A stretch of DNA of 64,000 nt from Auanema rhodensis. Taxonomy: Eukaryota; Animalia; Nematoda. Where the stretch lies: contig OZ059896.1 in the NCBI GenBank assembly GCA_964057225.1, positions 17,918,001 to 17,982,000 on the forward strand, written 5' to 3'. The notes below the pieces were generated by a model, which worked only from the letters and a program-made list of their open reading frames with translations, ran no database searches and was not told the origin of the DNA. The first letter of the stretch is position 1. The number at the start of each line of letters is the position of its first letter. A program made the position numbers and the translations under genes. This document shows, piece after piece, positions 13,738 to 43,700 of this stretch.

Positions 13738-16700
13738 ATGTCATCTTGGTTTTCGTATTTTACGTAAGTGCAATTAGATTTATTTTTTTAGTTTTATCCT
13801 TTCTTATATTTAAATTATTTACATTTTATCGATTTTTTAGTATTTTCATTGACTACCACAACTATTACTACTACTATTACTATCACTAATTACTTTGCTA
13901 ATTATTTCATTATTTAGTACTATATATTCAAAATTTATTCAAATTTTTTTTATATCTAACTTTGTATTAAAACTTCTAACTTTGAATGAGATATTTTGAA
14001 CTTCTTTATGATCTTTCTGTTTTCTGATTTTTTTAAAGATTATAACATATTTTATAATATGAAAGAAAAATTACAATTTTCATTGTTTTAATTTTTTATT
14101 CAATCATTAAACTTACCAAGAACTAAAATATTATTTTTCCATTCTATTTTAAGAGAAAATATCCTATTTTATGAACCTAAAAAGATATAATTATAATATT
14201 ATTATTTTAACTGTGAACATACTATTATTTTAAGCTACTATTTTATAAAAAACAACAAAATTGCTGTTTTAAAAGAAATTATTTCAATTATTCCTAAATT
14301 AACTTAGTAATTTATATAGATACACATACATTTCATGGAAATTTAGCACAAAAACTAGAAAAAAACTTTGTTTATTTGTTTGTTTACTCTTTCATTGTAG
14401 TAGACGTCTACCAGATGTACCGGAGAATGTAGAGGAAGAAGAACTAGCAGAAGAGCAGCATGCTCAATCTCCAACAGACCATGTAATTCTATTATATTCT
14501 TCGTTTTTACTAATTTCTGTGCAATTTTTAGTCACCTCCTCAAAGCTCTTCTGCTATACCCGGCCATCTGGAGTATGCAATGGATGAACTATCATTACAA
14601 CAGCGGGCTGCTATTGAAGAAGTCAGTTGCATTAAGAGAAAATATAACAGAAATTTACCCTTTTCCTACTTGTAGGTACTTCAAAGGGCTGAATCATCAC
14701 GTAAAGAAGCTCGGATAGTTATCGACAGCACACGTCTGAACAGATTAAAGAAAATTCCCAAAATGACGGCAGAATCTACTAGATCGTTTAGCGTTGAAGA
14801 CGCAAATATACGTGACAGTGACAGCGACGAGGAAAGGCAGAAACAGTTGATACAGATGGATTCCATACCTGAAAGTGAGTATATATGAAAGAAAGAGAGA
14901 AACGTGAATTTGAAATAGAGATAAACTGTTATAATGATATTTCAGGTGTTACTATTTCTGTGCTAGAAGTCGAAAGTACAAGTTTAACACCTGTACGAGA
15001 AAGATTAAAACATGAAGATAATGTTGAAACAGAAGAAGAAAAAATAGATGAAGAAAAAGGTATGAAAGCCATATATATATTCAAGTTGATAAACGAATAC
15101 GAATAAAATTTATAGAAATACCTCTAACTACAAGTATTGGCTCACGCATGAAGTTAATACGAACACATATAGCTCAATGGTTTAATTCACTTGATTATGA
15201 TGGCGATTATATGTCTCTTACAAATAATACGGGATATCAGGGTCTGTAAAGCAAATATATGAAATTATTTATCTTAACTTTTGATGTGCATAATTAACGA
15301 TTTAACAACACACGTTTTCAGATAAACGGATAAAAATTCAAGTATCACTTCAGCCTTTAGTTATGGATTATATAAATGCTCTTTCAAGCGGGATTGTTAT
15401 AGCTGCTACATTGGAATATTGTCAAAAAGCCTTAGAGGGTTCACCATTATTCAAAGCATACTGTCATGATTTATGCGAAACTATCTTTCAATTGGCGTAC
15501 AGCCAGCTTATACTTAGCTCCATCGATGATGAGAACATTCGCCAGCTTAATGGCTATTGCTCAAAGCTGGCATTAGACGTTATGGATACGGTTTATTTCA
15601 TAATACTTAATCGTACATTAGAAGATATTAGTTCACCTATGACAGAAATTCAGCAATTGAGTCAACTTCATCGATCACGTTCTTTTGTTAGTGCAGCAGA
15701 GTTAGAATCTGTAATCGAACGATTATCAGAAGATTTTGGTAAGCTTATATCTATAAAGGTCTTGCTAAATTTCACTTGCAGATGAGGAGGATTCTGTTTA
15801 TTCTTCAGTGAGTACTTCTTCTATTCTCTGTTATGAGGTATGATTATACAGATTTACAAAATATTTTTAAAGAGAATTGTCTTTGATTTAGGTACTTGCT
15901 GATTCGATTAATGAGCCAAATGAAGAAGAAATAGATAAAATTGATATTAATGAGTTCGATGAAGTCGTTAGCACGATATACGAACATCAACCGCTTGATC
16001 TACGGCGCTGCCTTCGCGATAATGTACTAGTAGAGCAATGGTCGGAGGAGCAAATTTTGATGATGGAAGAACATGCGATTTGTGAAAAGGCAGCAGTTGT
16101 AACACCTGAATCACAAGTTAAAGTCATTATTAGCCCCGCAACACCACTGACACCACCCCCGCGTCCACCACCTCCTCGCAACATTCAGTACTACTCCAGC
16201 GAAGAAGACTCCGAAGAACAATTATACGATTCAGGTTTGTTTCCTGAAGCTATATTTTCTGATATTTCACAAAACAACATCGAAAACGTTGACAATTACG
16301 GAATAGATGAAGATTCGACAAATGTTGTAGATGATAGCACGGACAATAGAACGAAGGACTATCAGAAAGCAATTGAAACAACGCAGGCAGAAGTTACATA
16401 TGTTCCAAAAGGTCAATGCTTCCCAAGCCAAACTTCAGTTGATAAGCCAGTTCCACCTCCACGTCCTCTACCACCTCAGGTTACCATCTCTGAAGATCAA
16501 GGTGATGACCGTTCCAGTGTTACATCTGGTGCTGACGTTGACAGAAGCTTCGATGCTTCTAGTTCTTTCGATCAGTATCCCGGACCATCAACATCTGAAA
16601 AGCCAAATGAAGAAGTAATCTCACTCTACCCAACTGATAAGCCAGAAGATCCTATAGCTTTAACCGAGGAAGAGCTACAATACCTTTCTCGAATTCAAAG

Positions 16701-19700
16701 ATTGGCCGAGGAAAGTGCGTTCGAGCAAGTTGTTCCACCTCCACGTCCTCTACCACCTCAGGTTACCATCTCTGAAGACCAAGGTGATGACCGTTCCAGT
16801 CATACATCTGGTGCTGACGTTGACAGAAGCTTCGACGCTTCTAGTCCATTCGATCAGTATCCCGGACCATCAACTTCTGAAAACCCAAATGAAGAAGTAA
16901 TCTCACTCTACCCAACTGAAAAGCCAGAAGATCCTATAGCTTTAACCGAGGAAGAGCTAGAGCATATTGCTCGAATTCAACGATTGGCAGAGGAAAGTGC
17001 GTTTGCGCAAATTGCTCCACCTCCACGTCCTCTACCACCTCAGGTTACTATCTCTGAAGACCAAGGTGATGACCGTTCCAGTCATACATCTGGTGCTGAC
17101 GTTGACAGAAGCTTCGAAGATTTAGTTGGGGCAGCCCCGACAGAAGAGATTCAAACAGACGACGTCGAAGAAACAGTCGTTGTGGGAACATCCGAGCCTA
17201 TTGATCTCACTCAAGACGAATTAGATTTTATTGTTGGAATTCAGCGATTGCCTAGCCAAACTTCTATTGATAAGCCAGTTCCACCTCCACGTCCTTTACC
17301 ACCTCAGGTTACCATCTCTGAAGACCAAGGTGATGACCGTTCCAGTCATACATCTGGTGCTAACGTTGACAGCAGCTTTGATACTTCTAGTTCATTCGAA
17401 CAGTATCCCGGACCATCAACTTCTGAAAACCCAAATGAAGAAGTAATCTCACTCTACCCAACTGAAAAGCCAGAAGATCCTATAGCTTTAACCGAGGAAG
17501 AGCTACAATACATTTCTCGAATTCAACGATTGGCAGAGGAAAGTGCGTTTGCGCAAATTGCTCCACCTCCACGTCCTCTACCACCTCAGGTTACCATCTC
17601 TGAAGACCAAGGTGATGACCGTTCCAGTCATACATCTGGTGCTGACGTTGACAGAAGCTTCGAAGATTTAGTTGTCGCAGCCCCAACAGAAGAGATTCAA
17701 ACTGACGACGTCGAAGAACCCGTCGTTGTGGGAACATCGGAGCCTATTGATCTCACTCAAGACGAATTAGATTTTATTGTTGGAATTCAGCGATTGCCTA
17801 GCCAAACTTCTATTGATAAGCCAGTTCCACCTCCACGTCCTTTACCACCTCAGGTTACCATCTCTGAAGACAAAGGTGATGACAGTTCTAGTGTTACATC
17901 TGGTGCTGACGTTGACAGAAGCTTCGAAGATTTAGTTGTCGCAGCCCCAACAGAAGAGATTCAAACTGACGACGTCGATGAACCCGTCGTTGTGGGAACA
18001 TCGGAGCCTATTGATCTCACTCGAGACGAATTAGATTTTATTGTTGGAATTCAGCGATTGCCTAGCCAAACTTCTATTGATAAGCCAGTTCCACCTCCAC
18101 GTCCTCTACCACCTCAGGTTACCATTTCTGAAGACCAAGGGGATGACCGTTCCAGTGTTACGTCTGGTGCTGACGTTGACAGAAGCTTCGACGCTTCTAG
18201 TTCATTCGAACAGTATCCCGGACCATCAACTTCGGAAAATCCAAATGAAGAAGTAATCTCACTCTACCCAACTGAAAAGCCGGAAGATCCTATAGCTTTA
18301 ACCGAGGAAGAGCTAGAGCATATTGCTCGAATTCAACGATTGGCAGAGGAAAGTGCGTTCGAGCAAGTTGTTCCACCTCCACGTCCTCTACCACCACAGG
18401 TTACCATCTCTGAAGACCAAGGTGATGACCGTTCCAGTCATACATCTGGTGCTGACGTTGACAGAAGCTTCGAAGATTTAGTTGTCGCAGCCCCAACAGA
18501 AGAGATTCAAACAGAAGACGTCGAAGAAACACTCGTTGTGGGAACATCCGAGCCTATTGATCTCACTCAAGACGAATTAGATTTTATTGTTGGAATTCAG
18601 CGATTGCCTAGCCAAACTTCTATTGATAAGCCAGTTCCACCTTCACGTCCTCTACCACCTCAGGTTACGATCTCTGAAGACCAAAGTGATGACCGTTCCA
18701 GTGTTACATCTGGTGCTGACGTTGACAGAAGCTTCGACGCTTCTAGTTCATTTGATCAGTATCCCGGACCATCAACTTCTGAAAACCCAAATGAAGAAGT
18801 AATCTCACTCTACCCAACTGAAAAGCCAGAAGATCCTATAGCTTTAACCGAGGAAGAGCTAGAGCATATTGCTCGAATTCAACGATTGGCAGAGGAAAGT
18901 GCGTTCGAGCAAGTTGTTCCACCTCCACGTCCTATACCACCACAGGTTACCATCTCTGAAGACCAAGGTGATGACCGTTCCAGTCATACATCTGGTGCTG
19001 ACGTTGACAGAAGCTTCGTAGATTTAGTTCTCGCAGCCCCAACAGAAGAGATTCAAACTGACGACGTCGATGAACCCGTCGTTGTGGGAACATCGGAGCC
19101 TATTGATCTCACTCGAGACGAATTAGATTTTATTGTTGGAATTCAGCGATTGCCTAGCCAAACTTCTATTGATAAGCCAGTTCCACCTCCACGTCCTCTA
19201 CCACCTCAGGTTACGATCTCTGAAGACCAAAGTGATGACCGTTCCAGTGTTACATCTGGTGCTGACGTTGACAGAAGCTTCGACGCTTCTAGTTCATTCG
19301 AACAGTATCGCGGACCATCAACTTCGGAAAATCCAAATGAAGAAGTAATCTCACTCTACCCAACTGAAAAGCCGGAAGATCCTATAGCTTTAACCGAGGA
19401 AGAGCTAGAGCATATTGCTCGAATTCAACGATTGGCAGAGGAAAGTGCGTTCGAGCAAGTTGTTCCACCTCCACGTTTTCTACCACCTCAGGTTACGATC
19501 TCTGAAGACCAAGGTGATGACCGTTCCAGTGTTACATCTGGTGCTGACGTTGACAGAAGCTTCGACGCTTCTAGTTCATTCGAACAGTATCCCGGACCAT
19601 CAACTTCGGAAAATCCAAATGAAGAAGTAATCTCACTCTACCCAACTGAAAAGCCGGAAGATCCTATAGCTTTAACCGAGGAAGAGCTAGAGCATATTGC

Positions 19701-22700
19701 TCGAATTCAACGATTGGCAGAGGAAAGTGCGTTCGAGCAAGTTGTTCCACCTCCACGTCCTCTACCACCACAGGTTACCATCTCTAAAGACCAAAGTGAA
19801 GATCGTTCCAGTGTTACATCTGGTGCTGACGTTGACAGAAGCTTCGAAGATTTAGTTGTCGCAGCCCCAACAGAAGAGATTCAAACTGACGACGTCGAAG
19901 AAACAGTCGTTGTGGGAACATCCGAGCCTATTGATCTCACTCAAGACGAATTAGATTTTATTGTTGGAATTCAGCGCTTGCCAAGCCAAACTTCTGTTGA
20001 TAAGCCAGTTCCACCTCCACGTCCTCTACCACCTCAGGTTACGATCTCTGAAGACCAAGGTGATGACCGTTCCAGTGTTACATCTGGTGCTGACGTTGAC
20101 AGAAGCTTCGACGCTTCTAGTTCATTCGAACAGTATCCCGGACCATCAACTTCTGAAAACCCAAATGAAGAAGTAATCTCACTCTACCCAACTGAAAAGC
20201 CAGAAGATCCTATAGCTTTAACCGAGGAAGAGCTACAATACATTTCTCGAATTCAACGATTGGCAGAGGAAAGTGCGTTCGAGCAAGTTGTTCCACCTCC
20301 ACGTCCTCTACCACCACAGGTTACCATCTCTAAAGACCAAAGTGAAGATCGTTCCAGTGTTACATCTGGTGCTGACGGGGACAGAAGCTTCGAAGATTTA
20401 GTTGTCGCAGCCCCAACAGAAGAGATTCAAACTGACGACGTCGAAGAACCCGTCGTTGTGGGAACATCGGAGCCTATTGATCTCACTCAAGACGAATTAG
20501 ATTTTATTGTTGGAATTCAGCGCTTGCCAAGCCAAACTTCTGTTGATAAGCCAGTTCCACCTCCACGTCCTCTACCACCTCAGGTTACCATCTCTGAAGA
20601 CAAAGGTGATGACAGTTCTAGTGTTACATCTGGTGCTGACGTTGACAGAAGCTTCGAAGATTTAGTTGTCGCAGCCCCAACAGAAGAGATTCAAACTGAC
20701 GACGTCGATGAACCCGTCGTTGTGGGAACATCGGAGCCTATTGATCTCACTCGAGACGAATTAGATTTTATTGTTGGAATTCAGCGATTGCCTAGCCAAA
20801 CTTCTATTGATAAGCCAGTTCCACCTCCACGTCCTCTACCACCTCAGGTTACCATTTCTGAAGACCAAGGGGATGACCGTTCCAGTGTTACGTCTGGTGC
20901 TGACGTTGACAGAAGCTTCGACGCTTCTAGTTCATTCGAACAGTATCCCGGACCATCAACTTCGGAAAATCCAAATGAAGAAGTAATCTCACTCTACCCA
21001 ACTGAAAAGCCGGAAGATCCTATAGCTTTAACCGAGGAAGAGCTAGAGCATATTGCTCGAATTCAACGATTGGCAGAGGAAAGTGCGTTCGAGCAAGTTG
21101 TTCCACCTCCACGTCCTATACCACCACAGGTTACCATCTCTGAAGACCAAGGTGATGACCGTTCCAGTCATACATCTGGTGCTGACGTTGACAGAAGCTT
21201 CGAAGATTTAGTTGTCGCAGCCCCAACAGAAGAGATTCAAACTGACGACGTCGAAGAAACAGTCGTTGTGGGAACATCCGAGCCTATTGATCTCACTCAA
21301 GACGAATTAGATTTTATTGTTGGAATTCAGCGCTTGCCAAGCCAAACTTCTGTTGATAAGCCAGTTCCACCTCCACGTCCTCTACCACCTCAGGTTACGA
21401 TCTCTGAAGACCAAGGTGATGACCGTTCCAGTGTTACATCTGGTGCTGACGTTGACAGAAGCTTCGACGCTTCTAGTTCATTCGAACAGTATCCCGGACC
21501 ATCAACTTCTGAAAACCCAAATGAAGAAGTAATCTCACTCTACCCAACTGAAAAGCCAGAAGATCCTATAGCTTTAACCGAGGAAGAGCTACAATACATT
21601 TCTCGAATTCAACGATTGGCAGAGGAAAGTGCGTTCGAGCAAGTTGTTCCACCTCCACGTCCTCTACCACCACAGGTTACCATCTCTAAAGACCAAAGTG
21701 AAGATCGTTCCAGTGTTACATCTGGTGCTGACGGGGACAGAAGCTTCGAAGATTTAGTTGTCGCAGCCCCAACAGAAGAGATTCAAACTGACGACGTCGA
21801 TGAACCCGTCGTTGTGGGAACATCGGAGCCTATTGATCTCACTCGAGACGAATTAGATTTTATTGTTGGAATTCAGCGCTTGCCAAGCCAAACTTCTGTT
21901 GATAAGCCAGTTCCACCTCCACGTCCTCTACCACCTCAGGTTACCATCTCTGAAGACAAAGGTGATGACAGTTCTAGTGTTACATCTGGTGCTGACGTTG
22001 ACAGAAGCTTCGAAGATTTAGTTGTCGCAGCCCCAACAGAAGAGATTCAAACTGACGACGTCGATGAACCCGTCGTTGTGGGAACATCGGAGCCTATTGA
22101 TCTCACTCGAGACGAATTAGATTTTATTGTTGGAATTCAGCGATTGCCTAGCCAAACTTCTATTGATAAGCCAGTTCCACCTCCACGTCCTCTACCACCT
22201 CAGGTTACCATTTCTGAAGACCAAGGGGATGACCGTTCCAGTGTTACGTCTGGTGCTGACGTTGACAGAAGCTTCGACGCTTCTAGTTCATTCGAACAGT
22301 ATCCCGGACCATCAACTTCGGAAAATCCAAATGAAGAAGTAATCTCACTCTACCCAACTGAAAAGCCGGAAGATCCTATAGCTTTAACCGAGGAAGAGCT
22401 AGAGCATATTGCTCGAATTCAACGATTGGCAGAGGAAAGTGCGTTCGAGCAAGTTGTTCCACCTCCACGTCCTCTACCACCACAGGTTACCATCTCTAAA
22501 GACCAAAGTGAAGATCGTTCCAGTGTTACATCTGGTGCTGACGTTGACAGAAGCTTCGACGCTTCTAGTTCATTCGAACAGTATCCCGGACCATCAACTT
22601 CTGAAAACCCAAATGAAGAAGTAATCTCACTCTACCCAACTGAAAAGCCGGAAGATCCTATAGCTTTAACCGAGGAAGAGCTAGAGCATATTGCTCGAAT

Positions 22701-25700
22701 TCAACGATTGGCAGAGGAAAGTGCGTTCGTGCAAGTTGTTCCACCTCCACGTCCTCTACCACCTCAGGTTACCATCTCTGAAGACCAAGGTGATGACCGT
22801 TCCAGTCATACATCTGGTGCTGACGTTGACAGAAGCTTCGAAGATTTAGTTGTCGCAGCCCCGACAGAAGAGATTCAAACTGACGACGTCGAAGAACCCG
22901 TCGTTGTGGGAACATCGGAGCCTATTGATCTCACTCAAGACGAATTAGATTTTATTGTTGGAATTCAGCGATTGCCAAGCCAAACTTCTGTTGATAAGCC
23001 AGTTCCACCTCCACGTCCTCTACCACCTCAGGTTACCATTTCTGAAGACCAAGGGGATGACCGTTCCAGTGTTACGTCTGGTGCTGACGTTGACAGAAGC
23101 TTCGACGCTTCTAGTTCATTCGAACAGTATCCCGGACCATCAACTTCGGAAAATCCAAATGAAGAAGTAATCTCACTCTACCCAACTGAAAAGCCGGAAG
23201 ATCCTATAGCTTTAACCGAGGAAGAGCTACAATACATTTCTCGAATTCAACGATTGGCAGAGGAAAGTGCGTTCGAGCAAGTTGTTCCACCTCCACGTCC
23301 TCTACCACCACAGGTTACCATCTCTAAAGACCAAAGTGAAGATCGTTCCAGTGTTACATCTGGTGCTGACGTTGACAGAAGCTTCGAAGATTTAGTTGTC
23401 GCAGCCCCAACAGAAGAGATTCAAACTGACGACGTCGAAGAACCCGTCGTTGTGGGAACATCGGAGCCTATTGATCTCACTCAAGACGAATTAGATTTTA
23501 TTGTTGGAATTCAGCGCTTGCCAAGCCAAACTTCTGTTGATAAGCCAGTTCCACCTCCACGTCCTCTACCACCTCAGGTTACCATCTCTGAAGACAAAGG
23601 TGATGAGAGTTCTAGTGTTACATCTGGTGCTGACGTTGACAGAAGCTTCGAAGATTTAGTTGTCGCAGCCCCAACAGAAGAGATTCAAACTGACGACGTC
23701 GAAGAAACAGTCGTTGTGGGAACATCCGAGCCTATTGATCTCACTCAAGACGAATTAGATTTTATTGTTGGAATTCAGCGCTTGCCAAGCCAAACTTCTG
23801 TTGATAAGCCAGTTCCACCTCCACGTCCTCTACCACCTCAGGTTACGATCTCTGAAGACCAAAGTGATGACCGATCCAGTGTTACATCTGGTGCTGACGT
23901 TGACAGAAGCTTCGATGCTTCTAGTTCTTTCGATCAGTATCCCGCACCATCAACTTCGGAAAAACCAAAAGAAGAAGTAATCTCACTCTACCCAAGTGAT
24001 AAGCCAGAAGATCCTATAGCTTTAACCGAGGAAGAGCTACAGCACATTGCTGAAATTCAAAGATTGGCCGAGGAAAGTGCGTTCGAGCAAGTTGTTCCAC
24101 CTCCACGTCCTCTACCACCTCAGGTTACCATCTCTGAAGACCAAAGTGAAGATCGTTCCAGTGTCACATCTGGTGCTGACGTTAACAGAAGCTTCGAAGA
24201 TTTAGTCGTCGCAGCCCCAACAGAAGAGATTCAAACTGACGACGTCGAAGAACCCGTCGTTGTGGGAACATCGGAGCCTATTGATCTCACTCAAGACGAA
24301 TTAGATTTTATTGTTGGAATTCAGCGCTTGCCAAGCCAAACTTCTGTTGATAAGCCAGTTCCACCTCCACGTCCTCTACCACCTCAGGTTACCATCTCTG
24401 AAGACAAAGGTGATGACAGTTCTAGTGTTACATCTGGTGCTGACGTTAACAGAAGCTTCGAAGATTTAGTCGTCGCAGCCCCAACAGAAGAGATTCAAAC
24501 AGACGACGTCGAAAAAACCGTCGTTGTGGGAACATCTCAGCCTATTGATCTCACTCAAGACGAATTAGATTTTATTGTTGGAATTCAGCGCATGCCAAGC
24601 CAAACTTCTGTTGATAAGCCAGTTCCACCTCCACGTCCTCTACCACCTCAGGTTACCATCTCTGAAGACTACGGTGATGACCATTCCAGTGTTACATCTG
24701 GTGCTGACGTTAACAGAAGCTTCGAAGATTTAGTTGTCGCAGCCCCGACAGAAGAGATTCAAACAGACGACGTCGAAGAAACAGTCGTTGTGGGAACATC
24801 CGAGCCTATTGATCTCACTCAAGACGAATTAGATTTTATTGTTGGAATTCAGCGCATGCCAAGCCAAACTTCTGTAGATAAGCCAGTTCCACCTCCACGT
24901 CCTGTACCACCTCAGGTTACCATCTCTGAAGACCACGGTGATGATCATTCCAGTGTTACATCTGGTGCTGACGTTGACAGAAGCTTCGATGCTTCTAGTT
25001 CTTTCGATCAGTATCCCGCACCATCAACTTCGGAAAAACCAAAAGAAGAAGTAATCTCACTCTACCCAAGTGATAAGCCAGAAGATCCTATAGCTTTAAC
25101 CGAGGAAGAGCTACAGCACATTGCTGAAATTCAAAGATTGGCCGAGGAAAGTGCGTTCGTGCAAGTTGTTCCACCTCCACGTCCTCTACCACCTCAGGTT
25201 ACCATCTCTGAAGACCACGGTGATGACCATTCCAGTGTTACATCTGGTGCTGACGTTGACAGAAGCTTCGAAGATTTAGTTGTCGCAGCCCCAAAAGAAG
25301 AGATTCAAACAGAAGACGTCGAAGAAACAGTCGTTGTGGGAACATCCGAGCCTATTGATCTCACTCAAGACGAATTAGATTTTATTGTTGGAATTCAGCG
25401 ATTGCCTAGCCAAACTTCTATTGATAAGCCAGTTCCACCTCCACGTCCTCTACCACCTCAGGTTACCATCTCTGAAGACCACGGTGATGACCATTCCAGT
25501 GTTACATCTGGTGCTGACGTTGACAGAAGCTTCGACGCTTCTAGTTCATTCGAACAGTATCCCGGACCATCAACTTCGGAAAATCCAAATGAAGAAGTAA
25601 TCTCACTCTACCCAACTGAAAAGCCGGAAGATCCTATAGCTTTAACCGAGGAAGAGCTAGAGCATATTGCTCGAATTCAACGATTGGCAGAGGAAAGTGC

Positions 25701-34700: not shown

Positions 34701-37700
34701 CCAACCTAGTCAACCTACTCTAGTTCCTCAAGTTACAGTTACTGAAGAAGCCGAGGAAGTTCACTCTAGTGCAACATCAGAAGCAGACATAGACCGAAGC
34801 TTTGAAGCTGCTGGATCGTTTGATCAGTACTACGAACGTTCATCTCCAATTCTCGGAGATGAAGAGGAAGAACATGAGCTTGGATATGTTGTGGAGAAAG
34901 CCGTTGATGAATCTACTGAACTTACTCAAGAAGAACTTGATCATATTGCTCGTATTCAAAGAATGGCAGCTGAAAGTTCCTTTGAAACCACTGGAACCAT
35001 TCAACCTATTCAACCTAGCCAACCTAACCACCCTACTCTAGTTCCTCAAGTTACAGTTACCGAAGAACCTGAGGAAGTTCACTCTAGTGCGACATCTGAA
35101 GCAGACGTTGACCGTAGCTTTGAAGCTGCAGGATCGTTCGAGCAGTACTACGAACGTTCATATCCTATTCTCGCAGACGAAGAGGAAGAACCTGAGCTTG
35201 GATATGTTGTGGAGAAAGCCGTTGATGAATCTACTGAACTTACTCAAGAAGAACTTGATCATATTGCTCGTATTCAAAGAATGGCAGCTGAAAGTTCCTT
35301 TGAAACCACTGGAACCATTCAACCTATTCAACCTATCCAACCTAGTCAACCTACTCTAGTTCCTCAAGTTACAGTTACTGAAGAAGCCGAGGAAGTTCAC
35401 TCTAGTGCAACATCAGAAGCAGACATAGACCGAAGCTTTGAAGCTGCTGGATCGTTTGATCAGTACTACGAACGTTCATCTCCAATTCTCGGAGATGAAG
35501 AGGAAGAACATGAGCTTGGATATGTTGTGGAGAAAGCCGTTGATGAATCTACTGAACTTACTCAAGAAGAACTTGATCATATTGCTCGTATTCAAAGAAT
35601 GGCAGCTGAAAGTTCCTTTGAAACCACTGGAACCATTCAACCTATTCAACCTAGCCAACCTAACCACCCTACTCTAGTTCCTCAAGTTACAGTTACCGAA
35701 GAACCTGAGGAAGTTCACTCTAGTGCGACATCTGAAGCAGACGTTGACCGTAGCTTTGAAGCTGCAGGATCGTTCGAGCAGTACTACGAACGTTCATATC
35801 CTATTCTCGCAGACGAAGAGGAAGAACCTGAGCTTGGATATGTTGTGGAGAAAGCCGTTGATGAATCTACTGAACTAACTGAAGAAGAACTTGATCATAT
35901 TGCTCGTATTCAAAGAATGGCAGCTGAAAGTTCCTTTGAAACCACTGGAACCATTCAACCTATTCAACCTATCCAACCTAGTCAACCTACTCTAGTTCCT
36001 CAAGTTACAGTTACTGAAGAAGCCGAGGAAGTTCACTCTAGTGCGACATCTGAAGCAGACATAGACCGAAGCTTTGAAGCTGCTGGATCGTTCGAGCGGT
36101 ACTACGATCGTTCATCTCCTATTCTCGGAGATGAAGAGGAAGAACATGAGCTTGGATATGTTGTGGAGAAAGCCGTTGATGAATCTACTGAACTAACTCA
36201 AGAAGAACTTGATCATATTGCTCGTATTCAAAGAATGACAGCTGAAAGTTCCTTTGAAACCACCGGAACCATTCGACCTAGCCAACCTAACCACCCTACT
36301 CTAGTTCCTCAAGTTACAGTTACCGAAGAACCTGAGGAAGTTCACTCTAGTGCGACATCTGAAGCAGACGTTGACCGGAGCTTTGAAGCTGCAGGTTCGT
36401 TCGAGCAGTACTACGATCGTTCATCTCCTATTCTCGGAGATGAAGAGGAAGAACATGAGCTTGGATATGTTGTGGAGAAAGCGGTTGATGAATCTACTGA
36501 ACTAACTCAAGAAGAACTTGATCATATTGCTCGTATTCAAAGAATGGCAGCTGAAAGTTCCTTTGAAACCACTGGAACCATTCAACCTAGCCAACCTAAC
36601 CACCCTACTCTAGTTCCTCAAGTTACAGTTACTGAAGAAGCCGAGGAAGTTCACTCTAGTGCGAAATCTGAAGCAGACATAGACCGAAGCTTTGAAGCTG
36701 CTGGATCGTTCGAGCAGTACTACGATCGTTCATCTCCTATTCTCGGAGATGAAGAGGAAGAACATGAGCTTGGATATGTTGTGGAGAAAGCGGTTGATGA
36801 ATCTACTGAACTAACTCAAGAAGAACTTGATCATATTGCTCGTATTCAAAGAATGGCAGCTGAAAGTTCTTTTGAAACCACTGGAACCATTCAACCTATT
36901 CAACCTATCCAACCTAGTCAACCTACTTTAGTTCCTCAAGTTACAGTTACTAAAGAAGCCGAGGAAGTTCACTCTAGTGCAACATCTGAAGCAGACGTTG
37001 ACCGGAGCTTTGAAGCTGCTGGATCGTTCGATCAGTACTACGAACGTTCATCTCCTATTATCGAAGACGAAGAGGAAGAACATGAGCTTGGATATGCTGT
37101 GGAGAAAGCCGTTGATGAATCTGCTGAACTAACTCAAGAAGAACTTGATCATATCGCTCGTATTCAAAGAATGGCCGCTCAGAGTTCTTTCGAAACCACT
37201 GGAATCATTCAACCTATTCAACCTAGCCAACCTAACCACCCTACTCTAGTTCCTCAAGTTACAGCTACCGAAGAAGACAAGGAAGTTCACTCTAGTGCAA
37301 CATCTGAAGCAGACTTTGACCGGAGCTTTGAAGCTGCAGGATCGTTCGAGCAGTACTATGATCGTTCATCTCCTATTATCGGAGACGAAGAGGAAGAACA
37401 TGAACTTGGATATGTTGTCGAGAAAGCTGTTGATGAATCTGCTAAACTTACTCAAGAAGAACTTGATCATATCGCTCAAATTCAAAGAATGGCCGCTCAG
37501 AGTTCTTTCGAAACCACTGGAACCATTCAACCTATTCAACCTATCCAACCTAACCACCCTACTCTAGTTCCTCAAGTTACAGCTACCGAAGAAGACAAGG
37601 AAGTTCACTCTAGTGCAACATCTGAAGCAGACATTGACCGAAGCTTTGAAGCTGCAGGATCGTTCGAGCAGTACTACGATCGTTCATCTCCTATTCTCGC

Positions 37701-40700
37701 AGATGAAGAGGAAGAACATGAGCTTGGATATGTTGTGGAGAAAGCTGTTGATGAATCTGCTAAACTTACTCAAGAAGAACTTGATCATATCGCTCAAATT
37801 CAAAGAATGGCCGCTCAGAGTTCTTTCGAAACCACTGGAACCATTCAACCTATTCAACCTATCCAACCTAGTCAACCTACTCTAGTTCCTCAAGTTACAG
37901 TTACTCAAGAAGCCGAGGAAGTTCACTCTAGTGCAACATCCGAAGCAGACGCTGACCGAAGCTTGGAAGATGGAGATTCGTTCGATCAGTACTACCATCG
38001 TTCATCTCCTATTATCGGAGACGAAGAGGAAGAACATGAACTTGGATATGTTGTGGAGAAAGCGGTTGATGAATCTACTGAACTTACTCAAGAAGAACTT
38101 GATCATATCGCTCAAATTCAAAGAATGGCCGCTCAGAGTTCTTTCGAAACCACTGGAACCATTCAACCTATTCAACCTATCCAACCTAGTCAACCTACTC
38201 TAGTTCCTCAAGTTACAGTTACTCAAGAAGCCGAGGAAGTTCACTCTAGTGCAACATCTGAAGCAGACGCTGACCGAAGCTTGGAAGATGGAGATTCGTT
38301 CGATCAGTACTACCATCGTTCATCTCCTATTATCGGAGACGAAGAGGAAGAACATGAACTTGGATATGTTGTGGAGAAAGCGGTTGATGAATCTGCTGAA
38401 CTTACTCAAGAAGAACTTGATCATATCGCTCAAATTCAAAGAATGGCCGCTCAGAGTTCTTTCGAAACCACCGGAACCATTCAACCTAGCCAACCTAACC
38501 ACCCTACTCTAGTTCCTCAAGTTACAGTTACCGAAGAACCTGAGGAAGTTCACTCTAGTGCGACATCTGAAGCAGACGTTGACCGGAGCTTTGAAGCTGC
38601 AGGTTCGTTCAAGCAGTACTACGATCGTTCATCTCCTATTCTCGGAGATGAAGAGGAAGAACATGAGCTTGGATATGTTGTCGAGAAACCCGTTGATGAA
38701 TCTGCTGAACTAACTCAAGAAGAACTTGATCATATTGCTCAGATTCAAAGAATGGCCGCTCAGAGTTCTTTCGAAACCACTGGAACCATTCAACCTATTC
38801 AACCTATCCAACCTAGTCAACCTACTCTAGTTCCTCAAGTTACAGTTACTCAAGAAGAACCTGAGGAAGTTCACTCTAGTGCGACATCTGAAGCAGACGT
38901 TGACCGGAGCTTTGAAGCTGCAGGTTCGTTCGAGCAGTACTACGATCGTTCATCTCCTATTCTCGGAGATGAAGAGGAAGAACATGAGCTTGGATATGTT
39001 GTGGAAAAAGCCGTTGATGAATCTACTGAACTAACTCAAGAAGAACTTGATCATATCGCTCAAATTCAAAGAATGGCCGCTCAGAGTTCTTTCGAAACCA
39101 CTGGAACCATTCAACCTATTCAACCTATCCAACCTAGTCAACCTACTCTAGTTCCTCAAGTTACAGTTACCGAAGAAGACAAGGACGTTCACTCTAGTGC
39201 GACATCTGAAGCAGACGTTGACCGGAGCTTTGAAGCTGCAGGTTCGTTCGAGCAGTACTACGATCGTTCATCTCCTATTCTCGGAGATGAAGAGGAAGAA
39301 CATGAGCTTGGATATGTTGTGGAAAAAGCCGTTGATGAATCTACTGAACTAACTCAAGAAGAACTTGATCATATCGCTCAAATTCAAAGAATGGCCGCTC
39401 AGAGTTCTTTCGAAACCACTGGAACCATTCAACCTATTCAACCTATCCAACCTAACCACCCTACTCTAGTTCCTCAAGTTACAGCTACCGAAGAAGACAA
39501 GGAAGTTCACTCTAGTGCAACATCTGAAGCAGACGTTGACCGAAGCTTTGAAGCTGCAGGATCGTTCGATCAGTACTATGATCGTTCATCTCCTATTCTC
39601 GCAGATGAAGAGGAAGAACATGAGCTTGGATATGTTGTGGAGAAAGCTGTTGATGAATCTGCTGAACTTACTCAAGAAGAACTTGATCATATCGCTCAAA
39701 TTCAAAGAATGGCCGCTCAGAGTTCTTTCGAAACCACTGGAACCATTCAACCTATCCAACCTACTCTCGTTCCTCAAGTTACAGTTACTCAAGAAGAACC
39801 TGAGGAAGTTCACTCTAGTGCAACATCTGAAGCAGACTTTGACCGGAGCTTTGAAGCTGCAGGATCGTTCGAGCAGTACTATGATCGTTCATCTCCTATT
39901 CTCGCAGATGAAGAGGAAGAACATGAGCTTGGATATGTTGTGGAGAAAGCTGTTGATGAATCTGCTGAACTTACTCAAGAAGAACTTGATCATATCGCTC
40001 AAATTCAAAGAATGGCCGCTCAGAGTTCTTTCGAAACCACTAGAACCATTCAACCTATTCAACCTAGCCAACCTAACCACCCTAGTCTAGTTCCTCAAGT
40101 TACAGTTACCGAAGAAGACAAGGAAGTTCACTCTAGTGCAACATCAGAAGCAGACGTTGACCGAAGCTTTGAAGCTGCAGGATCGTTCGATCAGTACTAT
40201 GATCGTTCATCTCCTATTCTCGCAGATGAAGAGGAAGAACATGAGCTTGGATATGTTGTGGAGAAAGCTGTTGATGAATCTGCTGAACTTACTCAAGAAG
40301 AACTTGATCATATCGCTCAAATTCAAAGAATGGCCGCTCAGAGTTCTTTCGAAACCACTGGAACCATTCAACCTATCCAACCTACTCTCGTTCCTCAAGT
40401 TACAGTTACTCAAGAAGAACCTGAGGAAGTTCACTCTAGTGCAACATCTGAAGCAGACATTGACCGAAGCTTTGAAGCTGCAGGATCGTTCGATCAGTAC
40501 TATGATCGTTCATCTCCTATTCTCGCAGATGAAGAGGAAGAACATGAGCTTGGATATGTTGTGGAGAAAGCTGTTGATGAATCTGCTGAACTTACTCAAG
40601 AAGAACTTGATCATATCGCTCAAATTCAAAGAATGGCCGCTCAGAGTTCTTTCGAAACCACTGGAACCATTCAACCTATTCAATCTAGCCAACCTAACCA

Positions 40701-43700
40701 CCCTACTCTAGTTCCTCAAGTTACAATTACTCAAGAAGAACCTGAGGAAGTTCACTCTAGTGCAACATCTGAAGCAGACGCTGTCCGAAGCTTGGAAGAT
40801 GGAGATTCGTTCGAGCAGTACTACGAACGTTCATCTCCTATTCTCGCAGATGAAGAGGAAGAACATGAGCTTGGATATGTTGTGGAGAAAGCTGTTGATG
40901 AATCTGCTGAACTTACTCAAGAAGAACTTGATCATATCGCTCAAATTCAAAGAATGGCCGCTCAGAGTTCTTTCGAAACCACTGGAACCATTCAACCTAT
41001 CCAACCTACTCTCGTTCCTCAAGTTACAGTTACTCAAGAAGAACCTGAGGAAGTTCACTCTAGTGCAACATCTGAAGCAGACATTGACCGAAGCTTTGAA
41101 GCTGCAGGATCGTTCGATCAGTACTATGATCGTTCATCTCCTATTCTCGCAGATGAAGAGGAAGAACATGAGCTTGGATATGTTGTGGAGAAAGCCGTTG
41201 ATGAATCTACTGAACTAACTCAAGAAGAACTTGATCATATTGCTCGTATTCAAAGAATGGCCGCTCAGAGTTCTTTCGAAACCACTGGAACCATTCAACC
41301 TATTCAATCTAGCCAACCTAACCACCCTACTCTAGTTCCTCAAGTTACAGTTACTCAAGAAGAACCTGAGGAAGTTCACTCTAGTGCAACATCTGAAGCA
41401 GACGCTGACCGAAGCTTTGAAGCTGCAGGATCGTTCGATCAGTACTATGATCGTTCATCTCCTATTCTCGCAGATGAAGAGGAAGAACATGAGCTTGGAT
41501 ATGTTGTGGAGAAAGCTGTTGATGAATCTGCTGAACTTACTCAAGAAGAACTTGATCATATCGCTCAAATTCAAAAAATGGCAGCTCAGAGTTCTTTCGA
41601 AACCACTGGAACCATTCAACCTATCCAACCTACTCTAGTTCCTCAAGTTACAGTTACCGAAGAAGACAAGGACGTTCACTCTAGTGCGACATCTGAAGCA
41701 GACGTTGACCGGAGCTTTGAAGCTGCAGGTTCGTTCGAGCAGTACTACGATCGTTCATCTCCTATTCTCGGAGATGAAGAGGAAGAACATGAGCTTGGAT
41801 ATGTTGTGGAGAAAGCCGTTGATGAATCTACTGAACTAACTCAAGAAGAACTTGATCATATTGCTCGTATTCAAAGAATGGCCGCTCAGAGTTCTTTCGA
41901 AACCACTGGAACCATTCAACCTATTCAACCTATCCAACCTAGTCAACCTACTCTAGTTCCTCAAGTTACAATTACTCAAGAAGAACCTGAGGAAGTTCAC
42001 TCTAGTGCAACATCTGAAGCAGACGCTGTCCGAAGCTTGGAAGATGGAGATTCGTTCGAGCAGTACTACGAACGTTCATCTCCTATTCTCGCAGACGAGG
42101 AGAAAGAACATAAGCTTGGATTTGTTGCGGAGAAAGCCGTTGATGAATCTGCTGAACTTACTCAAGAAGAACTTGATCATATCGCTCAGATTCAAAGAAT
42201 GGCAGCTGAAAGTTCCTTTGAAACCACTGTAACCATTCAACCTTGTCAACCTATCCAACCTACTCTCGTTCCTCAAGTTACAGTTACCGAAGAACCTGAG
42301 GAAGTTCACTCTAGTGCAACATCTGAAGCAGACGCTGACCGAAGCTTGGAAGATGGAGATTCGTTCGAGCAGTACTACGAACGTTCATCTCCTATTCTCG
42401 CAGACGAGGAGAAAGAACATAAGCTTGGATTTGTTGCGGAGAAAGCCGTTGATGAATCTGCTGAACTTACTCAAGAAGAACTTGATCATATCGCTCAGAT
42501 TCAAAGAATGGCAGCTGAAAGTTCCTTTGAAACCACTGTAACCATTCAACCTTGTCAACCTATCCAACCTACTCTCGTTCCTCAAGTTACAGTTACCGAC
42601 GAAGCTGAGGAAGTTCACTCTAGTGCAACATCTGAAGCAGACGCTGTCCGAAGCTTGGAAGATGGAGATTCGTTCGATCAGTACTATGATCGTTCATCTC
42701 CTATTCTCGCAGACGAGGAGAAAGAATATGAGCTTGGATTTGTTGCGGAGAAAGCCGTTGATGAATCTGCTGAACTAACTCAAGAAGAACTTGATCATAT
42801 CGCTCAGATTCAAAGAATGGCAGCTGAAAGTTCCTTTGAAACCACTGTAACCATTCAACCTTGTCAACCTATCCAACCTACTCTTGTTCCTCAAGTTACA
42901 GTTACTGAAGAAGCCGAGGAAGTTCACTCTAGTGCGACATCTGAAGCAGACGTTGACCGGAGCTTTGAAGCTGCAGGTTCGTTCGAGCAGTACTACGATC
43001 GTTCATCTGCTATTCTCGCAGACGAGGAGAAAGAATATGAGCTTGGATTTGTTGCGGAGAAACCCGTTGATGAATCTGCTGAACTAACTCAAGAAGAACT
43101 TGATCATATCGCTCAGATTCAAAGAATGGCAGCTGAAAGTTCCTTTGAAACCACTGTAACCATTCAACCTTGTCAACCTAACCACCCTACTCTAGTTCCT
43201 CAAGTTACAGTTACTGAAGAAGCCGAGGAAGTTCACTCTAGTGCGACATCTGAAGCAGACGTTGACCGGAGCTTTGAAGCTGCAGGATCGTTCGATCAGT
43301 ACTACGATCGTTCATCTCCTATTCTCGCAGACGAGGAGAAAGAATATGAGCTTGGATTTGTTGCGGAGAAACCCGTTGATGAATCTGCTGAACTAACTCA
43401 AGAAGAACTTGATCATATTGCTCGTGTAGAGCAACTAGCCGATGATACTATGTTTATGGATATTATGAGTGATGAAAAAATAACTGTGATTGAAAATATA
43501 AGACACAATAGCAATCTTAGGCCAGAAATGGTAGTTAACACTGATCATCTGAATATTAATCAGCATAGCCATGTTGAAGATAGCAAACATATTTATGATC
43601 TTGCCGAAATGTTCTCAAAACGATACGAGGAAGCGGAAAGAAATTCACGTGGACGACCGGTTTCTTCAAAGAGCTGGAGTGTTTGCCAAAACATAGAAAG

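What the first reader, a model, noticed from the sequence alone, without database searches (positions are those of the whole stretch)
16453..43215. About 90 calcineurin-docking-like PxIxIT motifs, one per repeat unit: candidate multivalent phosphatase scaffold
The best-conserved element across all three unit types is PQVT(I/V)(S/T): PQVTIS in all 57 array-1 units and PQVTVT/PQVTIT in most of the 37 array-2 units (three read PQVTAT). It fits the calcineurin PxIxIT consensus (NFAT PRIEIT, dynamin Ixb PRITIS) and is followed by acidic residues and a Ser/Thr cluster (SSxTSxAD..RSF) that could be the substrate. Together with the AKAP-like helices, this suggests an AKAP79-like PKA plus calcineurin scaffold at a presynaptic site with very high valency. 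I know of no prior description; it is a motif-level inference.
Basis: inference. Interest (0 to 1): 0.85.

Follow-up and report, generated by a model that had tools for sequence, protein, structure and literature searches.

The report
Repeat motif in worm synapse giant
All 94 repeat units of the giant nerve-terminal protein Clarinet (CLA-1L) carry a short PQVT motif that resembles a calcineurin docking site, but related worms lack it, and a better-conserved docking-type site lies elsewhere in the same gene.

Summary
Observation confirmed exactly. The 9460-codon open exon (16057-44439, +) holds 94 tandem units, and each has PQVT at the same place: PQVTIS x57, PQVTVT x32, PQVTIT x2, PQVTAT x3. 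By the literature this is the repeat region of C. elegans cla-1 long isoform.

Interpretation partly supported.
- For: on the published calcineurin PxIxIT scoring matrix, array 2 scores about 23 and array 1 about 19.4, against a cut-off of about 18.9. The sites are predicted disordered. PQVT shows only synonymous codon changes across the 94 copies.
- Against: the motif lies in the variable linker of the unit. One unnamed species has PSIEIH there, which is compatible with chance.
- Against: the free positions Q2 and T4 never change, yet key position 5 can be Ala. The exon has no LxVP motif.

By-product: a spliced exon at 58762-58911 encodes PEIMIT. This canonical P-x-I-x-(I/V)-T is kept in 12 nematode species and resembles the calcineurin-binding peptide of human Piccolo. 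It is the better docking candidate. I put the repeat motifs binding calcineurin at about 0.2-0.25.

The parts
16057..44439 (+). Single open frame of 9460 codons, the giant exon specific to the long isoform of cla-1 (Clarinet). The true splice acceptor lies somewhere before the first unit and was not mapped.
   Evidence: identified from PMC5728718 and PMC12402934
16474..31863 (+). Array 1: 57 units of 88 or 94 aa, each starting PQVTIS and each preceded by PPPRPLP. Unit 57 (31654-31863) is a 70-aa hybrid with an array-2 tail.
31864..43425 (+). Array 2: 37 units of 100-107 aa, starting PQVTVT (32), PQVTIT (2) or PQVTAT (3), each preceded by ..QPTLV. The last motif is at 43198-43215.
16474..16491 (+). 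First PQVTIS hexapeptide, an example of the array-1 motif. The 12-mer PLPPQVTISEDQ has a matrix score of 19.35.
31864..31881 (+). First PQVTVT hexapeptide, an example of the array-2 motif. The 12-mer TLVPQVTVTEEP/A scores 22.8-23.1.
16453..16473 (+). Proline block PPPRPLP. With the preceding PV it reads PVPPPR, a class II PxxPxR pattern. This block, unlike PQVT, has counterparts in other Caenorhabditis and in strongylid units.
   Evidence: the SH3-ligand reading rests on inspection only
58762..58911 (+). Small spliced exon outside the finding. It encodes ..KKTPEIMITVHDDSEEEESGSEDDDEYPDK.
   Evidence: Splice joints 58716>58761 and 58909>58958 (GT..AG) appear in contigs of 4 runs from one study; translation
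58831..58848 (+). PEIMIT, a canonical single-copy PxIxIT-type motif with matrix score 24.7. P, I, (I/V) and T are kept in 12 nematode species while the x positions vary.
58960..59138 (+). Next exon, VVAAPTAP..GKEVLQQIQAFGEAADDEFDVKW: the conserved helix that follows the PEIMIT site.

Best explanation
[quoted passage not shown] Each of its 94 tandem units has one short helix (LTxEELxHIxxIQR) flanked by disordered sequence. The parts of the unit shared with other nematodes are the helix, a proline block (PPxRP, in Caenorhabditis and strongylids), the Ser/Thr-acidic block SSATSGAD..SF(D/E) and YERSSPLL. PQVT(I/V)(S/T) sits in the variable linker between the proline block and the SSATSGAD block. 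It arose in the C. elegans lineage and was copied with the unit. Selection appears to have held it since arrays 1 and 2 diverged. My committed reading is that it is a lineage-specific short linear motif and not the protein's conserved calcineurin anchor. It is a real sequence match to weak PxIxIT peptides. However, what is kept is P-Q-V-T itself rather than P-x-hydrophobic-x-hydrophobic-(S/T). This points more to another partner or role than to calcineurin, for example an extension of the adjacent proline ligand, or a CK2-type [ST]-E-acidic phospho-acceptor segment. If CLA-1 docks calcineurin (TAX-6), the site best supported by sequence is the single PEIMIT in the exon at 58762-58911; by its position in Steinernema isoforms this site probably also lies in the medium isoform. 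The repeat motifs would then be at most low-affinity accessory sites that add avidity in C. elegans. Shown here: the counts, position, matrix scores, predicted disorder, codon pattern, absence from orthologues, and conservation and splicing of PEIMIT. Inferred: any binding partner.
For: Counts and spacing. Gene identity. Unit anatomy across 12 lineages, with the motif in a linker of variable length and sequence. No PQVT in 45 relatives, and no regex match in the modal units of C. nigoni, C. briggsae, C. japonica, C. bovis, Cooperia, Ostertagia, two Steinernema, Bursaphelenchus or P0011; the 145-aa Haemonchus unit was not among the scored units, but its linkers have no regex match either. Species names. 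Codons over 94 copies: P is CCT 86 / CCA 8; Q is CAG 57 / CAA 37; V is GTT 94; T is ACC 49 / ACA 37 / ACG 7 / ACT 1. These changes are synonymous only. Position 5 is I 59 / V 32 / A 3 and position 6 is S 57 / T 37, and the next residues vary freely. Array 1 versus array 2 consensus: PQVT has 2 synonymous and 0 non-synonymous changes, against 18 and 50 unit-wide. No LxVP in the exon. PEIMIT conserved, with invariant P, I, T and variable x positions, scoring 20.7-29.7 in 11 of 12 species. Exon spliced as predicted. Both kinds of site fall in coil regions of AF2 models.
Against: The repeat motifs do pass the published matrix: about 23 for array 2 and 19.4 for array 1, against a cut-off of about 18.9. 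Array 2 closely resembles validated binders, namely RTN1 DTVPTVTVSEPE and TRESK EAVPQIIISAEE. It has the favoured hydrophobic residue at position -1. [quoted passage not shown], so absence from orthologues is not decisive. Those authors also note that multivalent SLiM interactions often combine one consensus motif with degenerate variants. One other species, P0010, has PSIEIH (19.9) in the same linker. No alternative partner was tested; the SH3 and CK2 readings rest on inspection only.
Confidence: 0.55

Rival explanations
1. One reading: the roughly 90 PQVT(I/V)(S/T) sites are functional calcineurin PxIxIT docking sites. This would make CLA-1L a very high-valency scaffold or sponge for TAX-6 around the active and periactive zone, possibly cooperating with the conserved PEIMIT anchor.
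For: The sites pass the regex and the published matrix. The context is disordered (PMC12402934). The chance of the observed score in shuffled units is 0.5-5 %. There is codon-level constraint. TAX-6 uses PxIxIT docking in C. elegans via RCAN-1. TAX-6::GFP puncta co-localise with CLA-1. Human Piccolo carries a calcineurin-binding PxIxIT peptide, and BSN, PCLO and RIMS are predicted targets. Bassoon loss disturbs calcineurin and PKA activity.
Against: The motif is absent from orthologous repeats in 10 of 11 other lineages. The x positions Q2 and T4 are frozen, yet position 5 takes Ala in 3 units, where the score falls to 13.9. Array 1 is borderline because it has Asp at matrix position 11, and 12-14 of its 57 units fall below the cut-off. 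Position 3 is Val, not Ile. There is no LxVP. In the human proteome 21,791 sites match the regex, and the authors say these are almost exclusively non-binders. The match was found post hoc, out of many possible motif classes.
Confidence: 0.22
2. PQVT has no function of its own. Its uniformity would reflect recent amplification and homogenisation of the arrays by unequal crossing-over or gene conversion, and the PxIxIT resemblance would be coincidence.
For: Units within a class are nearly identical, and many other columns also show no non-synonymous variants. The 88-aa and 94-aa units share identical first 26 codons. A shuffled unit yields a loose regex match in 19-38 % of trials. The motif is lineage-specific.
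Against: PQVT supplies four of the only seven invariant columns, and the only contiguous run, in the 94-unit alignment. It shows several synonymous variants and no amino-acid change, while the residues immediately after it vary freely. It is retained between arrays 1 and 2, which differ by a non-synonymous change at 50 of 94 aligned codons.
Confidence: 0.2

Closest known systems
PxIxIT calcineurin-docking short linear motifs (NFATc1/2 PRIEIT, RCAN1 PSVVVH, TRESK PQIIIS, RTN1 PTVTVS, dynamin-1xb PRITIS)
   Same: The core is P-x-(V)-x-(I/V)-(S/T) in a disordered, cytosolic, acidic context. The scores lie in the range of weak validated sites: RCAN1 scores 23.5 against about 23 for array 2. Array 2 has Val at position -1.
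   Different: Position 3 is Val rather than Ile. The x positions are frozen and position 5 can be Ala. The motif is not conserved in orthologues. It is present in about 90 copies per protein. No binding data exist.
Human Piccolo peptide LSIPDVKITQHF (residues 2056-2067) and Bassoon RVIPDVRVTQHF
   Same: These are giant active-zone scaffolds. The Piccolo peptide was recovered in the calcineurin phage-display screen and used as a validated PxIxIT. The nematode single-copy site follows the same P-(D/E)-(V/I)-x-(I/V)-T-x-H pattern, for example TPEIMITVHD and PPEIKVTVHD.
   Different: The resemblance concerns the PEIMIT site, not the repeat motif. Homology between the nematode and vertebrate sites was not tested, and no human sequence was fetched.
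AKAP79/AKAP5 (PIAIIIT), a PKA plus calcineurin anchoring scaffold
   Same: It shares the concept of a scaffold that holds calcineurin through a PxIxIT-type site without being its substrate.
   Different: AKAP79 has one high-affinity site and a defined RII-binding helix. Here the PKA-binding helix is untested, and the repeat sites would be many and weak.
AHNAK / AHNAK2
   Same: These are giant repeat proteins with several PxIxIT matrix hits inside their repeat units in the published human list.
   Different: They are unrelated in sequence, are not synaptic, and their hits are likewise unvalidated.
Pfam DUF6619 and DUF7443
   Same: The array-2 units match both families. DUF6619 gives E 1.3e-15 and covers YERSSP to the helix. 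DUF7443 covers the helix.
   Different: Both are families of unknown function. Neither match covers the PQVT linker.

Membership tests
PxIxIT calcineurin-docking motif (repeat PQVT sites) | Core fits P[^PG][ILVF][^PG][ILVF][^PG] | tested here: met
   91 of 94 units fit; the three PQVTAT units fail
PxIxIT calcineurin-docking motif (repeat PQVT sites) | 12-position matrix score at or above the published p<=1e-4 cut-off (about 18.9) | tested here: met
   Array 2 scores 22.8-27.1 in 34 of 37 units. Array 1 scores 19.35-20.0 in 45 of 57 units, two more sit at 18.89, and ten score 15.9-17.6
PxIxIT calcineurin-docking motif (repeat PQVT sites) | Lies in an accessible, intrinsically disordered, cytosolic region | tested here: met
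   In the AF2 single-sequence model of units 55-58, all four sites are coil with pLDDT below 50 and only the helices are confident. This agrees with PMC12402934
PxIxIT calcineurin-docking motif (repeat PQVT sites) | Constraint falls on positions 1, 3, 5 and 6 while the x positions are free; motif kept in orthologues | tested here: not met
   Q2 and T4 are invariant while position 5 is I/V/A. The motif is absent from orthologous repeats of 10 of 11 other lineages. Conservation is supportive rather than strictly defining
PxIxIT calcineurin-docking motif (repeat PQVT sites) | Binds the calcineurin A docking groove; competed by PVIVIT; lost in NIR-type groove mutants | not testable with these tools
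   Needs a binding assay. A complex prediction could not be submitted
Calcineurin substrate | An LxVP motif in addition to PxIxIT | tested here: not met
   There are zero L.[VLI]P matches in the 9460-residue exon. Other exons of the gene were not scanned
PxIxIT calcineurin-docking motif (single PEIMIT site, 58831-58848) | Regex, matrix score, conservation of P1/I3/(I/V)5/T6 with free x positions, non-globular context | tested here: met
   The score is 24.7. Twelve species were aligned and P, I, T are invariant. The site is coil, ahead of a conserved helix, in an AF2 model built from an alignment. The exon is spliced. Binding itself was not testable
AKAP79-like PKA plus calcineurin scaffold | Amphipathic helix that binds the PKA R-subunit docking domain | not tested
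   This belongs to a separate first-reader note (s1-401565). Nothing here bears on it, except that the repeat helices match DUF7443 and one non-repeat helix in the next exon weakly matches the first helix of FYVE_2

The most novel reading that the evidence does not exclude
In the C. elegans lineage, CLA-1L has added about 90 weak PxIxIT sites to an ancient single calcineurin anchor (PEIMIT). This would create a high-valency reservoir that concentrates TAX-6 between the active zone and the periactive zone. It would tie Ca2+-dependent dephosphorylation to vesicle clustering and ATG-9 sorting.
Probability: 0.15. Interest if true: 0.75.

Novelty: new member of a known kind. Interest (0 to 1): 0.45.

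Why it matters
The repeat region makes up much of CLA-1L and is called the most enigmatic part of the protein; no binding partner is known for it. This work identifies which parts of the unit are ancient: the helix, SSATSGAD..SF, YERSSPLL and, in Caenorhabditis and strongylids, the proline block. It also shows that PQVT is a C. elegans novelty, which helps choose what to mutate. The conserved PEIMIT site gives a concrete, cheap test of whether an active-zone scaffold anchors calcineurin in worms. Such an anchor is suggested for vertebrates by the Piccolo peptide and the Bassoon phenotype. It could explain why TAX-6 puncta sit at CLA-1-marked active zones.

Tried and rejected
- Pfam scans of the units and flanking exons gave only DUF6619 and DUF7443, plus sub-threshold noise.
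- The look-up of encoding contigs for P0010, the one other species with a PxIxIT-like repeat linker, found no record, so its species stays unknown.
- The third homologue search, with 1052 aa of the arrays, returned only the C. remanei non-repeat fragment. No sister species closer than the briggsae/nigoni group could therefore be examined, and C. inopinata was not found.
- A second matrix hit in the next exon (PQIDLS, nt 45204, score 20.2) is not kept in C. brenneri or C. japonica, so I dropped it as chance.
- I considered several other motif classes by inspection only, from memory and not as tests, and set them aside. These were the LC8 TQT-type motif (Pro at -1 does not fit), HP1 PxVxL (Q at position 2, and nuclear), the SUMO-interaction motif (too few hydrophobic residues) and the composite LxVPxIxIT (array 2 reads T-L-V-P, so the Leu is one place off).
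- The P0010 motif could be read as independent support, but 11 shuffled non-elegans units give an expected 0.26 passing motifs and P(at least one) = 0.23, so it adds little.
Full report
WHAT IS THERE

The window holds one open frame of 9460 codons at 16057-44439 on the + strand, with raised G+C (0.42-0.47 against about 0.31 in the flanks). Tandem Repeats Finder reports two arrays: 17016-31801 (period 264, with 282-bp variants) and 31824-43425 (period 318). Spacings are 88 or 94 aa in array 1 and 100-107 aa in array 2, with one 70-aa hybrid at the junction, so every unit carries the motif.

[quoted passage not shown] It is described with a 282-bp unit, as predicted coil interrupted by helices, and with no known partner (PMC5728718; PMC12402934). 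Neither paper mentions calcineurin. A search for cla-1 together with calcineurin or tax-6 found no docking claim.

IS THE MOTIF SPECIAL WITHIN THIS PROTEIN?

Yes, moderately.
- In an alignment of all 94 units only seven columns are invariant. P, Q, V, T are four of them and the only contiguous run.
- The codons show synonymous variation with no amino-acid change. P is CCT 86 / CCA 8. Q is CAG 57 / CAA 37. T is ACC 49 / ACA 37 / ACG 7 / ACT 1.
- Position 5 is I 59 / V 32 / A 3 and position 6 is S 57 / T 37. The following residues vary freely.
- Between the array-1 and array-2 consensus units, PQVT has 2 synonymous and 0 non-synonymous changes. The unit-wide figures are 18 and 50.
- The 88-aa and 94-aa unit types share identical first 26 codons. 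For this motif there are therefore two independent classes, and effectively one ancestral event.

DOES IT FIT PxIxIT?

I took the 12-position matrix and its 33 training peptides from the supplement of Wigington et al. (bioRxiv 10.1101/632547). My transcription reproduces 12 published scores to within 0.02.
- Array 2 (TLVPQVTVTEEA/P) scores 22.8-23.1, up to 24.4, and 27.1 for PQVTIT.
- Array 1 (PLPPQVTISEDQ/H) scores 19.35-19.7.
- PQVTAT scores 13.9.
- In the published human list, 19.32 corresponds to p = 8.64e-5 and 19.0 to 9.7e-5, so the authors' p<=1e-4 filter sits near 18.9. A score of 23.4-23.5 corresponds to about 1.4e-5.

Array 2 therefore passes comfortably, in the range of RCAN1 PSVVVH. 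Array 1 passes narrowly. Overall 79-81 of 94 sites pass.

Array 2 resembles the validated RTN1 (PTVTVS) and TRESK (PQIIIS) peptides. It also has a hydrophobic residue at -1, which is favoured. An AF2 model of units 55-58 puts all four motifs in low-confidence coil, and only the helices are confident.

The caveats are:
- The same paper counts 21,791 loose-regex matches in the human proteome and says they are almost exclusively non-binders.
- Shuffled units pass the cut-off in 2-6 % of trials. They reach the observed score in 3-5 % (array 1) or 0.5 % (array 2).
- The match was noticed post hoc, out of many motif classes.

CONSERVATION

Two searches gave 45 related proteins, all from nematodes where a source names the species. 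The named species include C. nigoni, C. briggsae, C. japonica, C. bovis, C. remanei, Cooperia, Ostertagia, Haemonchus, Teladorsagia, Ancylostoma, two Steinernema and Bursaphelenchus. None contains PQVT.

Aligning the modal unit of each lineage shows shared blocks:
- the helix LTxEE(L/I)xHIxxIQ..AE.SSFE;
- the proline block PPxRP (Caenorhabditis and strongylids);
- SSATSGAD...SF(D/E);
- YERSSPLL.

PQVT(I/V)(S/T) falls in the linker between the proline block and the SSATSGAD block. That linker differs in length and sequence in every lineage. Examples are PPVPIRMATQDEPVIVTEAHEEE in C. nigoni and PPVPARLPTVDEPVAIQKQLTEHDE in C. japonica. These linkers have no regex match.

One protein of unknown species (P0010) has PSIEIH (19.9) in the same linker, five times. 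Eleven shuffled non-elegans units give an expected 0.26 passing motifs, with P(at least one) = 0.23, so this adds little.

Two further points count against docking or substrate function:
- The x positions Q2 and T4 never change, while key position 5 tolerates Ala.
- The 9460-residue exon contains no L.[VLI]P at all.

The Ser/Thr cluster proposed as the substrate is the most widely conserved element of the unit. It is present in lineages that have no PxIxIT-like motif.

A BETTER SITE IN THE SAME GENE

Scanning the forward frames outside the arrays gave KKTPEIMITVHD (score 24.7) at nt 58822.
- It lies in a 150-bp exon, 58762-58911, with a TTTCAG acceptor and a GTAAAA donor.
- Spliced contigs from four public runs (one study) join 58716>58761 and 58909>58958 at 100 % identity. 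This confirms the exon and its junction to the next one at 58960.
- Orthologous segments were found in C. brenneri, C. japonica, Steinernema (two species plus one unnamed relative), two Aphelenchoides, Setaria digitata, Panagrolaimus, Halicephalobus and Parastrongyloides.
- In the 12-species alignment P, I and T are invariant and position 5 is I or V. The x positions vary (E/A/M/V and T/K/M). The upstream flank is unalignable. Scores are 20.7-29.7 in 11 of 12 species.
- An AF2 model built from the alignment places the site in coil, with locally raised confidence, ahead of a conserved helix.

This is the conservation signature expected of a true PxIxIT. It also follows the same P-(D/E)-(V/I)-x-(I/V)-T-x-H pattern as the human Piccolo peptide, which was recovered in the calcineurin phage-display screen and used as a validated site. 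Bassoon has a paralogous predicted site.

Published context:
- Endogenous TAX-6::GFP puncta co-localise with CLA-1 at active zones of DD neurons (bioRxiv 10.1101/2022.11.29.518248).
- TAX-6 uses PxIxIT docking with RCAN-1 (PMC5125939).
- The human calcineurin network paper lists BSN, PCLO, RIMS1 and RIMS2 as predicted targets.
- Bassoon loss alters calcineurin and PKA activity (PMC9346490).

VERDICT

My estimates for the repeat motif:
- functional multivalent calcineurin docking: about 0.2-0.25;
- a constrained, lineage-specific motif with another partner or role: about 0.55 (this is my best explanation);
- a hitch-hiking sequence with no role of its own: about 0.2.

The idea that Clarinet anchors calcineurin becomes more credible, but through PEIMIT, which is outside the finding's coordinates. 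Nothing here shows binding. The decisive experiments are simple peptide pull-downs with PVIVIT competition, and an endogenous PEIMIT mutant imaged for TAX-6.

LIMITS

- C. elegans CLA-1L itself was not returned by the protein searches, so I could not compare the window's arrays with the reference protein.
- No species closer than the briggsae/nigoni group had an assembled array.
- Alternative partners (SH3 domains, CK2) rest on inspection only.
- The AF2 model of the units used a single sequence.

Noticed in passing
window 58762-58911 (motif 58831-58848), next exon 58960-59138: A single-copy canonical PxIxIT, PEIMIT (matrix score 24.7), lies in a small spliced exon. It is followed by an acidic/Ser run, DDDEYPD and a conserved helix. 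P-x-I-x-(I/V)-T is kept in 12 nematode species of clades III-V, with variable x positions. The pattern resembles the calcineurin-binding peptide of human Piccolo. I found no description of it in the literature searched.
   Followed up: yes
window 16057-44439: The open exon alone has 9460 codons and about 27 kb of repeats (57 + 37 units). The literature gives CLA-1L as 8922 aa in total, with a repeat region of about 4000 aa / 12 kb, or '23 tandem 94-aa repeats'. The arrays in this window are therefore roughly twice the published size. Either the reference arrays are collapsed or this is another assembly or strain. I did not resolve which.
   Followed up: partly
every unit, e.g. window 16453-16755; relatives P0001-P0015: The shared parts of the unit are the helix LTxEE(L/I)xHIxxIQ..AE.SSFE, SSATSGAD...SF(D/E), YERSSPLL and, in Caenorhabditis and strongylids, a proline block. 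In most Caenorhabditis and P0010 the proline block reads as a class II PxxPxR pattern (PVPPPR, PPVPIR, PPVPAR, PPPPMR, PPPPQR). In array 1, RPLPPQV also overlaps the PQVT motif. This could be a multivalent SH3-ligand array; that reading rests on inspection only.
   Followed up: partly
window 44547-45299 (e.g. LSQAEREHIQSVLEKAE) and the repeat helices: The many L(S/T)xxE(R/L)xxIxxV/I..AE helices match Pfam DUF7443. One of them gives a faint hit (E 0.43, 11 bits, far below threshold) to positions 2-20 of FYVE_2. From memory, that is the first helix of the rabphilin/RIM-type Rab-binding domain. This is only a lead: the helices may be Rab-effector-like rather than AKAP-like.
   Followed up: partly
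window 31654-31863: Unit 57 is a 70-aa hybrid, with an array-1 head (PQVTIS..EDLVVAAPTEEIQTDDV) fused to an array-2 tail (SSFETTGTIQPSQPNHPTLV). It marks the junction of the two arrays.
   Followed up: no
window about 45360-45380: PPPPIDIQ aligns with PPPIAIS in C. brenneri and C. japonica. This is a second conserved P-x-I-x-I-like stretch, but it has Pro at an x position, which the published regex excludes.
   Followed up: no
window 45204-45239: LETPQIDLSKHE scores 20.2 on the PxIxIT matrix but is not kept in C. brenneri or C. japonica. It is probably a chance match, and it illustrates the background rate in this protein.
   Followed up: yes
window 46354-46762: A further short tandem array (120-bp unit, 3.4 copies) encodes SQEEIDHIRRMQEMADAQ-type helices in the next exon. 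It has no PQVT-like motif.
   Followed up: no
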